This document shows, piece by piece, positions 1,631 through 61,129 of a stretch of 64,000 bases of DNA. Position 1 is the first letter of the stretch. Every line of letters begins with the position of its first letter. The stretch spans positions 62,001 to 126,000 of IMG/VR virus record IMGVR_UViG_3300037010_003311. One strand, given 5' to 3'. Under the pieces are notes generated by a model that saw nothing but the letters and a program-made list of their open reading frames with translations, was not told the DNA's origin and did not search any database. The translations under genes were made by a program, and so were the position numbers.

Positions 1631-1650
1631 GCTCTCCTGTCGCGAAAAAG
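1604..1650 (+). terminator. Hairpin plus TCCTGTCG element
   Basis: Perfect 12-bp AGAGCTTACCGG/CCGGTAAGCTCT stem containing the stop codon, then CTCCTGTCGCGAAAAAG. Confidence 0.6.
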
Positions 1651-48033: not shown

Positions 48034-48075
48034 TTGTTTTTCGACGACAGGAAAACGGTCGAAAACCGACCGTTA
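48034..48075 (-). terminator. Hairpin plus TCCTGTCG element
   Basis: - strand: TAA overlapping AACGGTCG-GTTTT-CGACCGTT, then TTCCTGTCGTCGAAAAAC. Confidence 0.6.
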
Positions 48076-56550: not shown

Positions 56551-57597
56551 TTATATTCCTGGAAGAGTTGGATATTTACTGAAGTCTACACTTTCATTGG
56601 TATGGTACTCATTTTTAAGTAGCTTTTGTAAAGTATCTAAATCAATAGTTGCTCCACAAGCGTTACGATGGCCACCTCCACCAAATTTTTTAGCATAAAC
56701 CGAAGCATCACATAATGTATCTAAACTACGGAATGAAAGTACTACCTTTAAATCATCTGTTATAAAATACATCAACGCTGGTTTATTTGTAAGTTTACAG
56801 AGTTCATTCCCTACTTCTGAAATATTTTCGGTTAGATTCAAGCATACAAATTCTTCTGAATCAATAGTTATAGTTCTATATTTTTTAACTTTAGATGCAA
56901 CTGCTTGGTCTTTTACTCTTAATAGAGTTGCACCAATTTTAATGGCCTCATCCAGATCAAAGTTATCTACTAGATCTAAGAATGATTCTAAATTATTTGG
57001 AACAACTGAATATCTTAAATATTCAGAAACTTCTTTTGAATGAGCCAATGACCAGTTCCAAAGATCCCTATCCTGGATATAATCAGAAATAATATCCATA
57101 TTGCGCAGTCGTTTAACTTCATGTAATTTATTGGAAGTTGCAAAATAATCATAAGTAATTTTGGCACCCGAACGGTTCATATCAAATACTAATTCTAAAT
57201 TTTCAATCCCTGAATTTTCTAACTCTTTTAAATTGGCTTCCGCTGTTTTATGATGATCAAGAATGGTTACTGAGTTAAACTTAGTTGTGAGATCTTTTAT
57301 AATTTCGGGGGAAGCACTAAAATCTAAAAAGAGTAAATCAAAACTTTTGCTCATGTCATTTGCTAATACTTCATAGATATCTTCACCATACTGTATAGGT
57401 AAACATTTATATGATATTTCCATATCAATGAAATAGCTTTCTGCTATAAATGCCGCAGCTAATCCATCCATACAATTTTTATGATATAAGACTGTAACTT
57501 GTGGTGGGCATGGTAATGACTGCTCCAAACTATGAACATACCTCACAATATCACTGATTCTATTTACTGATAATTGTCTACCTTCATATGTACTCAT
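56551..57597 (-). CDS. DHH/DHHA1 phosphoesterase
   Basis: YHKNCMDG, FLDFS, LDHH, DRDLW, GGGHRNACG. Confidence 0.92.
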   Translation of the reverse strand: MSTYEGRQLSVNRISDIVRYVHSLEQSLPCPPQVTVLYHKNCMDGLAAAFIAESYFIDMEISYKCLPIQYGEDIYEVLANDMSKSFDLLFLDFSASPEIIKDLTTKFNSVTILDHHKTAEANLKELENSGIENLELVFDMNRSGAKITYDYFATSNKLHEVKRLRNMDIISDYIQDRDLWNWSLAHSKEVSEYLRYSVVPNNLESFLDLVDNFDLDEAIKIGATLLRVKDQAVASKVKKYRTITIDSEEFVCLNLTENISEVGNELCKLTNKPALMYFITDDLKVVLSFRSLDTLCDASVYAKKFGGGGHRNACGATIDLDTLQKLLKNEYHTNESVDFSKYPTLPGI

Positions 57598-58391
57598 TCA
57601 ACATCCTTTGATTTTTTAACACACTCAATTACTGCATCAACTTGACAAGTTATATATTCATGCGAGTCTTCGGTGTATGGTATGGTCATATTAATTAAAT
57701 AATCGAAACCAAAATATTCTAAAGCAAATTCTGATATATGATAACCATCTTCTTTCTCTTTATTAATAGCTGAGTTCAAAATTTTTACACAATAAACACT
57801 ATGAATACTTTCATCAACTAAACCACTGTACTCTTCCGGAAAGCGAAAATCGTTTACCAATATAAGTTTTTTAGTGCTTCTATTAACCGCGGTAATTACA
57901 AGTTGAGTCCATACTTCTTTAGTAAATACCAGTTTCCATATTTCACCAATTTGTCTAGTCAACTGTTTAATAGACATATGTAATTGTTCTGGAATCTCAT
58001 GCTCCAGTCTATAACCAGTTCCAAGGATATGGTTTAGAATAGCAAGTAGCCCCATTTTATTATATTCGAACCCTTTTTGACTAAGTCTTATAGCGGTATC
58101 GTTTATACAATCATTGATACGGTGCAGAATACCGGCACTATTAAAAGTATAAAGATCATTTAATTCTGTATCGGGGATATCCGTGATATCCATATTCATA
58201 AGTTGGGAAGCATAATTTTTTAGAAAAAATGCAAACTGTAGAGTTTCTAAATCATTTTTATCTTGTTCGAAGATTTTAGTTAAAAATAATCTTTCCTTTT
58301 TCTCACCACTTAATAAAATAATTTTTTTATATCGATCTTTAACTAGTGGTACTGGTGATACTGGTAGGGGGTCATTTAAATCATTATGCAT
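57594..58391 (-). CDS. Deoxynucleoside-monophosphate kinase-like protein, degenerate P-loop
   Basis: KIILLSGE.., FAFFLK, RQIGE..., LVNDFRFPEE, SEFAL; Walker A GKS/T/D absent. Confidence 0.65.
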   Translation of the reverse strand: MHNDLNDPLPVSPVPLVKDRYKKIILLSGEKKERLFLTKIFEQDKNDLETLQFAFFLKNYASQLMNMDITDIPDTELNDLYTFNSAGILHRINDCINDTAIRLSQKGFEYNKMGLLAILNHILGTGYRLEHEIPEQLHMSIKQLTRQIGEIWKLVFTKEVWTQLVITAVNRSTKKLILVNDFRFPEEYSGLVDESIHSVYCVKILNSAINKEKEDGYHISEFALEYFGFDYLINMTIPYTEDSHEYITCQVDAVIECVKKSKDVE

Positions 58392-58424
58392 CGTTTATCC
58401 TTTGTAAATTTAATTACCCTATAT

Positions 58425-58435
58425 ATTTCTATATT
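58425..58435 (-). promoter_or_regulatory. AATATAGAAAT motif
   Basis: Exact 11-mer 34 nt upstream of 58391. Confidence 0.6.
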
Positions 58436-58476: not shown

Positions 58477-58525
58477 AATTCCTTTTTCTGCGACAGGAAA
58501 CCGATGGGTGGGATTATCTCCCACC
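58477..58525. repeat. 49-bp direct repeat, copy 1
   Basis: AATTCCTTTTTCTGCGACAGGAAACCGATGGGTGGGATTATCTCCCACC; 48/49 identical to 59931-59979. Confidence 0.95.
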
Positions 58526-59928
58526 TATTCCAATTGAAATATATAATTCCCGGAATCCCAAATTATATTATATTGGCTCGGATTGCTATTATTTTGAAAT
58601 CCAGGTATTAATTTATAAGGATTTTTATTTTTCCAATAAAAAGAGTTGGGATAGCTTGTACCAATTTCTTGGAAACCAAGTCGTCGGTATAAGTTGCCAT
58701 TCGACCAGCGTCTATTTACATAGGTTTTAATGCTTCCCGTGTGATCAGCCCGAAATGCTTTAAGCAATCTGCTTGCTGCACCATGAACATTATAACCAAG
58801 CTTATTGCAAAAACGCATTAGCTCCCAATCTGCGCTTTTGTCAATTCCTTCTTTGCTGGAAGCAAAATTCATAATGCTAATGAGATCATCATTATAATAT
58901 AGACCATAAGCAATTGAACTTGAGCAGTAACCTTGTAAGTGATTAGCTTCTAGAAACGGTTTTATATCATATTTAGGTACCGGCTTAATAGTATGATCCT
59001 CGGCTTCTAGTTGTATGCTTCTACCAAGAGTGTTCTGGATTATCGATTTCCAAATATTTTGCTTGGTTTTATTTACCCATTCGTTTTCGAAGATATGAAA
59101 AAGTTGGATACCTTTAGTCTGGCATAATTTAGTTTTATGTAAATGTCTATTTTTGCAATAATTAAAATCATTCTGTTGTTTACAGGTATGTTTATTTTGT
59201 CCACAATAACTATGCCAATATATACCATTATATTCGATTGCTAAATTATAGTCAGGTATATAGATATCTAATTCTAATGGTTTTATAATAGATCTGGAAC
59301 CAAGTATTATCTTAGAATCAATTAAACTAGAAATATAATTATTTATCTCATCTTCTGCCAAACTTTGGTTATAATATTGTGAGACCCCAATATCTAATTT
59401 TTTTAATTGTTTATGTGCGGTACTCTGATTACATTTAAAATATTCGGTGCATTTAATTAAATGAAATCGGTCATTAATAATAAAATTCGATATCCAAAAA
59501 TTTTTATTGTTCCAATTTTTTTGAATGGTTATATCATTATTAAATTTTCTCAACTGTTTTTCATTTTTAATTTTTTTACTATTTGATGGATTAGAAGCTC
59601 CATATTTTATTAGACAAGTATCTTTAACTTTATCTTTAGTATTAGCTAGTTGTGAAATATATTCTACTCCATAATTTTTAGAACAGGTTTCTTTTCTTTT
59701 TTTAATCGATTCGATTTTTAAATCTTCTTTTATAATTTCTTTGCATTCAATAGAGCAATATTTTGTAAATCCATACCCAATCTTCCAAGATATAAAATGA
59801 TTACAGTTTGGGTTAGAGCATTTAGCTTGTTCAAAGCTTTTGCCACTTTTTAAAAATCTGGATATAAAAGTCCTATCCACTTTTTTATTAATATCTAGTT
59901 CTGGATAAAAATTTAAAAAATCTTGCAT
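58525..59928 (-). mobile_element. Hef-like homing endonuclease gene with C-terminal GNAT-like domain
   Basis: ELDIYIPDYNLAIEYNGIYWHS; FLEANHLQG; ELMRFC...GAASRLLK; flanked by 49-bp direct repeats. Confidence 0.85.
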
Positions 59929-59930
59929 CT

Positions 59931-59979
59931 AATTCCTTTTTCTGCGACAGGAAACCGATGAGTGGGATTATCTCCCACC
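59931..59979. repeat. 49-bp direct repeat, copy 2
   Basis: Contains the last codons and stop of 59968-60198, a hairpin, TCCTGTCG and the RBS of the endonuclease gene. Confidence 0.95.
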
Positions 59980-60198
59980 CATCGCTGAACCTAACGCTTT
60001 TGATTTTTCTTCTTTTATTGTGACTACTAATTTTTCGAACTCACGTTGTGCGAATATTGGTAGCGACATATATTCAGTAAACCCCATGTTAAAGTTTGCA
60101 TAAGCTTGCAACTCCTGGAAGTTTTTTATTGCTGACATCCAATGATTTTCGGATAAATTATAAGGCGTAAAAAGATGAGGCTTTACGAAAAAACTCAA
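59968..60198 (-). CDS. Baseplate hub assembly protein (T4 gp51-like)
   Basis: Small protein with FTEYMSLPIF..REF motif directly after the gp26-like gene. Confidence 0.6.
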   Translation of the reverse strand: MSFFVKPHLFTPYNLSENHWMSAIKNFQELQAYANFNMGFTEYMSLPIFAQREFEKLVVTIKEEKSKALGSAMGGR

Positions 60199-61129
60199 TT
60201 TCTGGGTTCACCGGCCACTTAAATTCCTTTCCACAGTTCACATTTTTACACATTTTGGATGCATAAAACTTTGGCTGATATTGAGCAAGACCCTCATAGC
60301 CGGAGATTGTTTCAATTAACTTTTCTAAAAGCACGATATTTTTAAGACCCATGATAAATGGATATATCTCTTCTTTAAGTTTTGTAAGTTTTATCACTAC
60401 ACCATCTTTATTTGAGATTGTTACAGATTTAATAAACATTATGAAAACAGAAAGTGTTTCAAATAGGTCATTATAATCTTCAAGATTTTGTCTTAATTCT
60501 TTATCATCTTTAATTGATAATACATCAAGTGAATCTTTTTCTGTTTGAAAACCCATCTCTATTTCAAAGCCTGGAGCAATAACTAAAGTTTCTTTAAAAT
60601 CGGTAAAGAGCATTTTCTTATCCCATTTCTTCGGTAGAGAATCTTTATGTAAGAGTTCATCCGGTCTAATGTTATGGATCTGTTTTTTATTGCAGTATGG
60701 GCACTCGAATTCTCGTTCACCTAAATCAGGATATGTTGCAAAAAGCAAGCCATAAGTTAGCATAGTTTTATCCGCTGAACCTAAATGCGCCATGAAATCA
60801 TTAATATCTTTAAATTTAATCTTGCCTTGAAAATCAGTATGGGCAAAAAGTATTTCATCAAATGCTTTAATAAATGTTTCACCACTCGCTTTTAAACTTT
60901 TGATATTGAGTTCTTCTAAACCTTTAATTGGTTTTACTAAAACCTTTGTTTTTAATAATGGTAAATCCACTTCGGTTTGGCGCCATTCACATAATGCATC
61001 TAATGCATTTAATGCGGTCATATATGCAGGAGCTGATACCGCTGGGGCGGTTTCCGAACCAGCTCCAGGGATACTACCAAGACCAGGTATCCCAAGATTA
61101 GCTAAGTCATTTTGTAGTTCTTCAATCAT
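60158..61129 (-). CDS. Baseplate hub protein (T4 gp26-like)
   Basis: V.LP..KTKV.VKP..G.EE, D...L.Y.L..ATY, CPYC and C-terminal CKNVNC. Confidence 0.7.
   Translation of the reverse strand: MIEELQNDLANLGIPGLGSIPGAGSETAPAVSAPAYMTALNALDALCEWRQTEVDLPLLKTKVLVKPIKGLEELNIKSLKASGETFIKAFDEILFAHTDFQGKIKFKDINDFMAHLGSADKTMLTYGLLFATYPDLGEREFECPYCNKKQIHNIRPDELLHKDSLPKKWDKKMLFTDFKETLVIAPGFEIEMGFQTEKDSLDVLSIKDDKELRQNLEDYNDLFETLSVFIMFIKSVTISNKDGVVIKLTKLKEEIYPFIMGLKNIVLLEKLIETISGYEGLAQYQPKFYASKMCKNVNCGKEFKWPVNPEIEFFRKASSFYAL

What the first reader, a model, noticed from the sequence alone, without database searches (positions are those of the whole stretch)
58477..59979. Homing-endonuclease gene bracketed by 49-bp direct repeats that supply its RBS and hairpin
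Seen: 48/49 identical repeats abut both ends of the ORF; the repeat holds the end of the gp51-like gene, the hairpin+TCCTGTCG element and AAAAAGGA. Established: classical homing copies by gene conversion and leaves no such duplication; IS target duplications are much shorter. Inference: insertion by crossover of a circular intermediate at the conserved element, so the cassette could also excise precisely, which would be an unusual mobility route for Hef-like genes.
Basis: partly seen in the sequence, partly recalled or inferred. Interest (0 to 1): 0.62.

Follow-up and report, generated by a model that had tools for sequence, protein, structure and literature searches.

The report
Homing-endonuclease gene flanked by target duplication
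A selfish Hef-like nuclease gene in a 227-kb environmental phage sits between two copies of the 52-bp hairpin signal it landed beside, natural relatives keep the unoccupied site with a single copy, and this shows how such genes can enter a new site without damaging their neighbours.

Summary
A 52-nt direct repeat (50/52 identical, 1454 bp apart) brackets a 467-aa minus-strand ORF of the Hef-like homing-endonuclease family.

Independent contigs from several samples cross both junctions, so it is not a mis-assembly. Four contigs from four other samples carry the same site without the gene and with exactly one repeat. They fall into two repeat variants and four flank haplotypes (93-98% identical). 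One variant cannot be made by recombining the two copies of the filled allele, so the empty site is ancestral and the gene is an insertion with a target duplication.

A second paralogue elsewhere in the genome has the same anatomy: a 47-nt perfect repeat and its own natural empty site. Four more endonuclease-like ORFs in other phage contigs are bracketed by duplicated local regulatory DNA. None of 156 other ORFs is bracketed this way.

The repeat is one of 19 genome-wide elements: a site-specific hairpin, then TTTCCTGTCG, then an A-run. The duplication includes the site-specific hairpin and the last codons of the upstream gene. A circle from elsewhere crossing over at the conserved box therefore cannot explain it.

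Best reading: microhomology-mediated duplicative insertion, followed by ordinary homing. Loss by recombination between the repeats is possible. Circles are neither shown nor excluded.

The parts
58525..59928 (-). HEG-A: intact 467-aa Hef-like free-standing homing-endonuclease gene. It has an N-terminal Cys-rich/DUF7487 region, a central Vsr/DUF559-like PD-(D/E)XK motif (ELDIY..AIEYNG..WHS) and a C-terminal GNAT/Mom-like domain.
   Evidence: ORF. phrog_3339 'homing endonuclease' E 2.6e-93 and phrog_559. Pfam DUF7487. tblastn hits annotated 'Hef-like homing endonuclease' in 417 phage records. Invariant E219, D221, E232, H239 and K265 in a 44-sequence alignment. AF2 model pLDDT 84.8. Foldseek best hits are Mu Mom and GNATs for the C-terminal domain.
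59931..59982 (-). Upstream repeat copy. It holds the end of the upstream ORF (ATG GGT GGG AGA TAA), a 12-bp hairpin with one G.U pair, the TTTCCTGTCG box and AAAAAGGAATT. The RBS-like AAGGA lies 7 nt before the HEG ATG.
58477..58528 (-). Downstream repeat copy. It starts at the HEG stop (GAA TAG G...). Its hairpin is reduced to a 7-bp stem by G>A. The same box and tail follow, then the native intergenic DNA.
59945..59954 (-). Conserved box TTTCCTGTCG in the upstream copy. The same box in the downstream copy is at 58491-58500.
   Evidence: 19 co-oriented hairpin+box elements in the 226,657-bp genome
59968..60198 (-). Upstream ORF (76 aa from TTG; called as 56 aa, 59968-60138, by JGI). Its last codons and stop lie inside the repeat. 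It overlaps the 323-aa ORF 60158-61129 by 41 nt in the +1 frame.
58424..58432 (-). ATAGAAATA promoter-like motif of the downstream 265-aa gene (57594-58391). The motif recurs about 25-45 nt before many RBSs in the genome. The HEG was inserted between the hairpin element and this motif and has no copy of its own.
57594..58391 (-). Downstream 265-aa gene (weak dNMP-kinase-like PHROG hit). It lies directly after the single repeat in all empty-site contigs.

Best explanation
A free-standing Hef-like homing-endonuclease gene entered the intergenic space just 3' of a terminator-like hairpin/TTTCCTGTCG element. The entry duplicated 49-52 bp of the target. SHOWN: the unoccupied site with one element copy is the ancestral state, and the filled allele equals the empty allele plus 1454 bp. 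The inserted unit is essentially the bare ORF: 2 nt of leader, with its stop at the start of the second copy. The same anatomy recurs at a second paralogue with its own empty allele. INFERRED: both joints were made by microhomology-mediated illegitimate recombination. The left joint lies in GGAATT, which resembles the leader GGAATTTAG before paralogue HEG-B (a resemblance that may be chance). The right joint lies in AT(A/G)GG at the base of the hairpin. The likeliest route is two template switches during recombination-dependent replication, with the return landing behind the point of departure. Such duplicative insertions would survive selection because the upstream gene keeps its stop and hairpin, the HEG gains an RBS and a hairpin, and the downstream gene keeps its promoter. 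INFERRED from the family: once in place, the gene spreads into empty alleles by endonuclease cleavage and homologous repair. Each repeat copy differs from the closest empty allele by one substitution in the hairpin stem, and these may protect the filled allele from its own enzyme. The 52-bp repeats also allow precise loss by homologous recombination or single-strand annealing.
For: Repeat and anatomy. HEG identity. Empty alleles with exactly one repeat: the joint 58507>59962 'skips 1454' in run X4, plus four contigs from four samples, L082-L085 (alignment A3). These are 93.3-98.2% identical to the window in the flanks. All filled contigs from 5 samples are identical to the window in the parts compared. 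The type-2 empty repeat (L082, L084) differs from both filled copies at 4 positions, so it is not their recombinant. Second case: HEG-B (genome 135121-136686) has a 47-nt 100% repeat and the empty contig L094 with one element. Generality: regulatory-element brackets around L058:580-2295, L038:635-2170, L011:674-1558 and L057:806-1690, which is 4 of 76 HEG-like ORFs against 0 of 156 other ORFs. Precedent for illegitimate DSB repair at microhomology during ectopic intron/HEG acquisition in T4: review PMC2988022.
Against: The mechanism of the two joints is inferred only from their sequence. The microhomologies are short (6 and 2-5 nt) in AT-rich DNA. No donor locus was found. Cleavage activity and the target of this enzyme are untested. 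The tandem HEG-E/HEG-D pair lies between two elements that share the box and tail (28 nt, 93%) but not the hairpin. That looks more like recombination inside the conserved element, so more than one route may operate. A Campbell-type circle carrying the local 52 bp would leave the same product.
Confidence: 0.6

Rival explanations
1. Campbell-type route. A small circle made of the HEG plus this site's own 52-bp element integrates into an empty genome by a single homologous crossover. It can also excise the same way, like the PeSL mini-circles of T4-type phages.
For: The product (repeat, gene, repeat) and the one-repeat empty allele are exactly what this predicts. PeSL mini-circles formed between flanking regulatory stem-loops were shown by inverse PCR in RB49/phi1 (PMC2839356). 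About 50 bp of homology is assumed here to be enough for phage recombination (own knowledge, not tested).
Against: A circle must already carry the local, site-specific repeat, so it explains spread but not origin. It still needs the same two illegitimate joints. No go-back or circle joint appeared in the contigs of 4 runs (weak evidence, because contigs drop rare forms). No empty contig with flanks identical to the filled haplotype was seen, as recent excision would give.
Confidence: 0.25
2. The cassette arrived with its own hairpin+box terminator, and recombination in the conserved box joined it to the target. The two neighbouring elements were later homogenised by gene conversion.
For: All three element-associated paralogues (A, B, D) end 0-2 nt before a hairpin. 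The E/D pair is flanked by elements with different hairpins but a shared box and tail. Patchy 98% identity between HEG-A and HEG-C shows conversion between distant copies.
Against: Only about 10-15 nt are shared between different elements, which is a poor anchor for converting 52 nt exactly up to the HEG stop codon. The identity ends sharply at both borders at two independent sites.
Confidence: 0.08
3. The filled, two-repeat state is ancestral and every empty allele is a precise excision product.
For: The type-1 empty repeat equals a crossover between the two mismatches of the filled copies.
Against: The type-2 empty repeat carries 4 differences found in neither filled copy. Empty alleles occur on at least four diverged haplotypes, whereas all filled contigs are identical. 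The same holds for the HEG-B empty allele in a strain 8-13% diverged in the aligned flanks.
Confidence: 0.05
4. An assembly artefact created the duplication.
For: Short repeats can mislead assemblers.
Against: Independent Logan and JGI contigs from several samples cross each junction without mismatch. The two copies are distinguishable by two substitutions.
Confidence: 0.01

Closest known systems
Free-standing homing endonuclease genes of T4-like phages (seg, mob, and Hef of phage U5); intronless homing
   Same: A nuclease gene sits alone in an intergenic space between conserved genes. It is present or absent among close relatives at the same site. It has no promoter of its own and lies behind a terminator-like hairpin. 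It belongs to the family annotated Hef-like (review PMC2988022).
   Different: Classical homing is gene conversion and leaves no duplication. Here 47-52 bp of the target are duplicated at two independent sites. The literature searches run here found no description of such brackets for free-standing HEGs.
PeSL (promoter-early stem-loop) mobile regulatory cassettes and their mini-circles in RB49/phi1, PST and nt-1 (PMC2839356, PMC4122927)
   Same: Regulatory stem-loop elements flank ORFs that differ between close relatives. Recombination between flanking copies can delete or circularise the ORF. The phage supplies no dedicated recombinase.
   Different: PeSLs are well-conserved promoter-plus-terminator units at many sites. 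Here only a 10-nt box and an A-run are shared, hairpins are site-specific, no sigma-70-type promoter lies in the repeat, and the second copy is absent from the empty allele. It was therefore created by the insertion and was not pre-existing.
Illegitimate (microhomology) double-strand-break repair in ectopic intron/HEG acquisition in T4 (Parker, Belisle and Belfort 1999, as summarised in PMC2988022); microhomology-mediated template switching
   Same: The joints lie at short microhomologies, no transposase or inverted terminal repeats are present, and the event occurs in a phage.
   Different: Those were laboratory events. A natural filled/empty pair with a long target duplication is documented here, but the mechanism is only inferred.
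IS/transposon target-site duplications
   Same: Direct repeats of target DNA flank the insert, and the empty site has one copy.
   Different: There is no transposase and there are no terminal inverted repeats. The lengths are 47 and 52 bp here and 26 to about 95 bp elsewhere, and they vary between events. IS duplications are short and of fixed length (own knowledge).

Membership tests
Hef-like free-standing homing endonuclease gene | Sequence homology to proteins annotated Hef / Hef-like | tested here: met
   phrog_3339 E 2.6e-93. tblastn: 417 phage records, with top hits annotated 'Hef-like homing endonuclease' or 'Hef' at 31-37% identity over 80-96% of the query.
Hef-like free-standing homing endonuclease gene | Intact nuclease domain with conserved catalytic-type residues | tested here: met
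   ELDIY..AIEYNG..WHS motif. E219, D221, E232, H239 and K265 are invariant in 44 sequences. The fold of this domain was not matched separately, because the PDB hits were dominated by the C-terminal GNAT/Mom-like domain. Campylobacter phage CP220's homologue is annotated with a hit to the 'Restriction endonuclease-like' superfamily SSF52980.
Hef-like free-standing homing endonuclease gene | Stands alone between conserved genes, with presence/absence polymorphism at the same site in close relatives | tested here: met
   Filled: window, L077, L080, L081. Empty: L082-L085.
Hef-like free-standing homing endonuclease gene | Site-specific cleavage of the empty allele and unidirectional conversion (homing) | not testable with these tools
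   Needs enzyme assays or co-infection. The only hint is one substitution in the hairpin stem of each repeat copy relative to the type-1 empty allele.
PeSL-type mobile regulatory cassette | Composite of a strong promoter and a terminator stem-loop | tested here: not met
   A hairpin is present. No promoter-like hexamer pair falls in the repeat. The phage's ATAGAAATA motif lies outside it.
PeSL-type mobile regulatory cassette | Well-conserved copies at many sites, so that different sites can recombine | tested here: not met
   The 19 elements share only TTTCCTGTCG plus Y-N-R-AAAA, and the hairpins all differ.
PeSL-type mobile regulatory cassette | Mini-circles formed between flanking copies | tested here: inconclusive
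   No such joint appeared in the contigs of 4 runs. Contigs cannot show rare circular forms, and raw reads were not available.
IS / DNA transposon | Transposase gene and terminal inverted repeats, with a short duplication of fixed length | tested here: not met
   The only ORF is the HEG. No inverted repeat lies at the insert ends. Duplications are 52 and 47 bp at the two sites.
Integrase-mediated integrative element (att sites) | Tyrosine or serine recombinase in or beside the element | tested here: not met
   Pfam and PHROGs scans of the insert and its neighbours show none.

The most novel reading that the evidence does not exclude
Hef-like genes, and related DUF7487-type endonuclease genes, colonise new intergenic sites by a duplicative route that is distinct from homing. 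The route is either template switching at stalled hairpins or short-homology integration of a gene-plus-element mini-circle. It leaves 25-95 bp duplications of the local regulatory signal, which make the insertion harmless and reversible. The hairpin stem itself would be the enzyme's target, with one protective substitution in each duplicated copy.
Probability: 0.2. Interest if true: 0.75.

Novelty: new variant of a known kind. Interest (0 to 1): 0.55.

Why it matters
How free-standing homing-endonuclease genes first reach a new intergenic site is poorly understood, because homing only explains spread between alleles of one site. This case provides two independent insertions in one phage. Each has its matched natural empty site, exact junctions, and a long duplication of a regulatory hairpin. 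Similar brackets surround related endonuclease genes in other phages but not other genes. That gives a sequence footprint of the colonisation step. It also explains how the insertion avoids harming its neighbours, and it gives a built-in route to precise loss. The target and immunity hypotheses can be tested directly with the four natural versions of the repeat: the type-1 and type-2 empty repeats and the two filled copies.

Tried and rejected
- Mis-assembly: rejected. Independent contigs cross both junctions.
- Chance repeat: rejected.
- Known RNA family in the repeat: none in Rfam at E up to 1.
- Close relatives in the GenBank phage collection by DNA: none.
- Relatives through the 323-aa neighbour: none in IMG/VR or in phage records.
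- Pattern scans for empty-site alleles of HEG-A and HEG-B in IMG/VR, for the A repeat itself in JGI metagenome contigs, and for an empty allele of the L058 analogue: all blank. The empty alleles were found instead through cluster members of the neighbouring proteins.
- The box plus A-run in IMG/VR: 26 single hits, about the number I estimate from random expectation, so the element looks specific to this lineage.
- The repeat pair at genome 224532/225011 turned out to be a tandem duplication of a paralogous gene with its element, not an insertion bracket.
- L056, L012 and L058:2380-3825 'brackets' are tandem endonuclease genes sharing 3' ends.
- Cluster member P0005 (L086) is an unrelated protein.
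- The Sandegren 2005 and Parker 1999 papers are not held. What is said of them comes from the review PMC2988022.
- The large protein searches (search for homologous proteins, the search of protein representatives) were not needed and were not run.

Full report
**Setting.** The window is bases 62001-126000 of a 226,657-bp virus record. The record has 32% G+C and is estimated 81% complete. It was assembled from a JGI metagenome (3300037010). Near-identical DNA occurs in runs labelled microbial-mat and sediment metagenomes. Genes around the finding run on the minus strand, so I describe the locus in that orientation.

**Observation.** The repeat finder reports two copies of a 52-nt sequence at 58477-58528 and 59931-59982. 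They are 50/52 identical and 1454 bp apart. Genome-wide self-BLAST scores the pair as 49 nt at 98%. Between them lies the ORF 58525-59928 (467 aa).

- The upstream copy holds the last four codons and stop of the preceding small ORF (59968-60198).
- It also holds a 12-bp hairpin, the box TTTCCTGTCG and AAAAAGGAATT.
- The ATG of the 467-aa ORF follows 2 nt later.
- The downstream copy begins at the ORF's TAG stop and runs into the native spacer, which carries the promoter-like ATAGAAATA motif of the next gene.
- Contigs built independently from other samples cross each junction without a mismatch, so this is not an assembly artefact.

**What the gene is.**
- PHROGs places it in phrog_3339 'homing endonuclease' (E 2.6e-93). 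Pfam sees only DUF7487.
- tblastn finds 417 phage records. The best are annotated Hef or Hef-like homing endonuclease, in Proteus, Campylobacter, Yersinia and Pseudomonas phages.
- In a 44-sequence alignment the motif ELDIY..AIEYNG..WHS is invariant at E219, D221, E232 and H239, as is K265. From my own knowledge this is the Vsr/DUF559-type PD-(D/E)XK signature.
- An AlphaFold model (pLDDT 84.8) matches phage Mu Mom and GNAT acetyltransferases in its C-terminal domain.
- The gene is intact. The genome holds six further paralogues.

**What the repeat is.** The genome carries 19 elements of one kind, all co-oriented with the genes.
- Each has a hairpin placed shortly after a stop codon; the box lies 3-71 nt past the stop in 18 of the 19 elements.
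- The box TTTCCTGTCG follows, nearly invariant, and then Y-N-R-AAAA.
- The hairpin sequences are all different.
- At two other elements (genome 4621 and 61642) the A-run with GGA serves as the RBS of the next gene, just as for this ORF.
- Rfam has nothing like the element. A scan of IMG/VR gives only about the number of single hits that I estimate from random expectation.
- Its function is unknown. Its form is terminator-like.

**The decisive evidence: empty sites.** Laying the contigs of four runs on the locus showed one contig in run X4 that skips exactly 1454 bp between the repeats. Looking up cluster members of the neighbouring proteins then fetched four real contigs from four different samples:
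- L083 (Logan SRR11723144);
- L085 (JGI 3300035181);
- L082 (JGI 3300036715);
- L084 (JGI 3300035180).

In all four the small upstream ORF is followed by one copy of the element and then by the 265-aa gene, with no endonuclease gene.
- L083 and L085 (type 1) have a perfect hairpin. Each copy of the filled allele differs from type 1 by one substitution in the stem: C>T upstream, and G>A downstream, which also makes the TAG stop.
- L082 and L084 (type 2) carry four differences that occur in neither copy of the filled allele.
- The empty contigs are 93.3, 96.0, 97.3 and 98.2% identical to the window in the flanks.
- Every filled contig, from five samples, is identical to the window in the parts compared.
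- One sample (3300035180) holds both alleles.

The empty state is therefore old and diverse, and the filled state is young and uniform. The gene is an insertion, and the second repeat copy was created with it.

**Recurrence.** Paralogue HEG-B (genome 135121-136686), between a 259-aa gene that follows a 777-aa ORF (neither identified) and the large terminase, is bracketed by a 47-nt perfect repeat of its local element.
- Here the duplication begins inside the 5' arm of the hairpin, and the insert brings a 57-nt AT-rich leader.
- Contig L094 from a diverged strain joins the upstream gene to the downstream spacer through a single element, so this is a second independent filled/empty pair.
- In both cases the left joint lies 14-16 nt after the box, and the right joint lies 0-2 nt after the endonuclease stop codon.
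- The tandem pair HEG-E/HEG-D lies between two elements that share the box and tail (28 nt, 93%) but have different hairpins.
- Three other paralogues are packed tightly between genes without elements.

I also examined 70 IMG/VR loci carrying Hef-like genes.
- Four endonuclease-like ORFs are bracketed by duplicated local regulatory DNA: L058:580-2295, L038:635-2170, L011:674-1558 and L057:806-1690.
- The duplicated DNA is a terminator hairpin plus RBS and start codons in one case, and promoter-like sequence in the others. It is 26 to about 95 nt long, and in the three promoter-like cases it overlaps the stop codon.
- That is 4 of 76 endonuclease-like ORFs against 0 of 156 other ORFs. The one other hit is a tandem tail-tube paralogue.

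**Mechanism.**
- There is no transposase, integrase or terminal inverted repeat.
- The duplication length varies between events.
- Both joints of HEG-A sit in short microhomologies. The left is in GGAATT, which resembles the leader GGAATTTAG before HEG-B. The right is in AT(A/G)GG at the hairpin base.
- T4 is known to acquire mobile DNA ectopically by illegitimate double-strand-break repair at microhomologies (review PMC2988022).
- I therefore favour microhomology-mediated template switching, in which the return lands behind the departure point. Selection would then keep only insertions that leave every neighbour its signals.
- A Campbell-type integration of a circle that already carries the local 52 bp gives the same product and cannot be excluded. 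PeSL mini-circles are the precedent (PMC2839356).
- A circle from another site crossing over in the conserved box is excluded, because the duplication includes site-specific sequence.
- Later spread by homing and loss by recombination between the repeats follow from established knowledge of the family and of phage recombination. Neither was observed here.

**Novelty.** The gene family, intergenic presence/absence polymorphism and stem-loop-mediated shuffling are all known. I did not find any description of long target duplications bracketing free-standing endonuclease genes with matched natural empty sites. I rate this a new variant of a known kind and of moderate interest.

Noticed in passing
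window 1633-1642 (+), 48045-48054 (-), 58491-58500 (-), 59945-59954 (-); 19 places genome-wide: A lineage-specific intergenic element: a site-specific 8-12-bp hairpin after a stop codon, then the nearly invariant TTTCCTGTCG, then Y-N-R-AAAA. It is always co-oriented with the genes. It is absent from Rfam and not multi-copy in any other IMG/VR contig. Function unknown (terminator, processing site or promoter).
   Followed up: partly
window 59968-61129 (-), overlap 60158-60198: The 323-aa ORF and the 76-aa ORF overlap by 41 nt in the +1 frame at a T6 run. No indel is listed there in the contigs of four runs. This is either a separate 56-aa gene, as JGI calls it, or a frameshift site.
   Followed up: partly
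window 58891-59034 versus genome 56837-56980 (L074:2837-2980): A 144-nt stretch of HEG-A is 98% identical to paralogue HEG-C, although the proteins are only 43% identical overall. This suggests recent gene conversion between distant endonuclease paralogues. The shared stretch lies in the linker before the GNAT-like domain and at the start of that domain.
   Followed up: partly
window 58525-59000 (-), residues about 310-467 of the ORF: The C-terminal domain of the Hef-like protein folds like a GNAT. Its best PDB match is the DNA-modifying protein Mom of phage Mu (8bv8; E 1.4e-05).
   Followed up: partly
genome 270-331 and 1358-1419 (outside the window): A different 62-nt palindromic repeat (95% identical) carries the ATAGAAATA motif on both strands. 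It brackets an ORF (genome 629-1321, 230 aa) that looks HD-phosphohydrolase-like by eye (no family scan run), in a PeSL-like arrangement around a gene that is not an endonuclease.
   Followed up: partly
window 58424-58432 (-) and about 40 other places in the genome: ATAGAAATA, often within TAATATAGAAATAT, recurs about 25-45 nt before the RBS of many genes. It is probably this phage's own promoter consensus.
   Followed up: partly
genome 223836-226657 (outside the window): A tandem array of at least four paralogous small genes with an identical N-terminus (MNQIDLILENIRLGH...) and Gly-rich tails. The last two are each followed by a 98%-identical copy of a hairpin+box element.
   Followed up: partly
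L092 (NCBI GCA_022759085.1, JAEMPY010000363.1): A fragment in the same 90%-identity cluster as this phage's large terminase lies on a contig binned into a MAG labelled Ignisphaera sp., a hyperthermophilic archaeon. This is probably a binning error, but it hints at a hot-spring habitat or host.
   Followed up: no
L084:1-1993 versus window: This empty-site contig is mosaic. It is identical to the filled haplotype up to about 270 nt upstream of the repeat and diverged like L082 from there on, which points to recombination between strains close to the insertion site.
   Followed up: partly
L073:13800-17400 (genome 145800-149400): HEG-E and HEG-D lie in tandem with overlapping reading frames, between two elements with different hairpins but a shared 28-nt box and tail. 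This may be a product of recombination inside the conserved element.
   Followed up: partly
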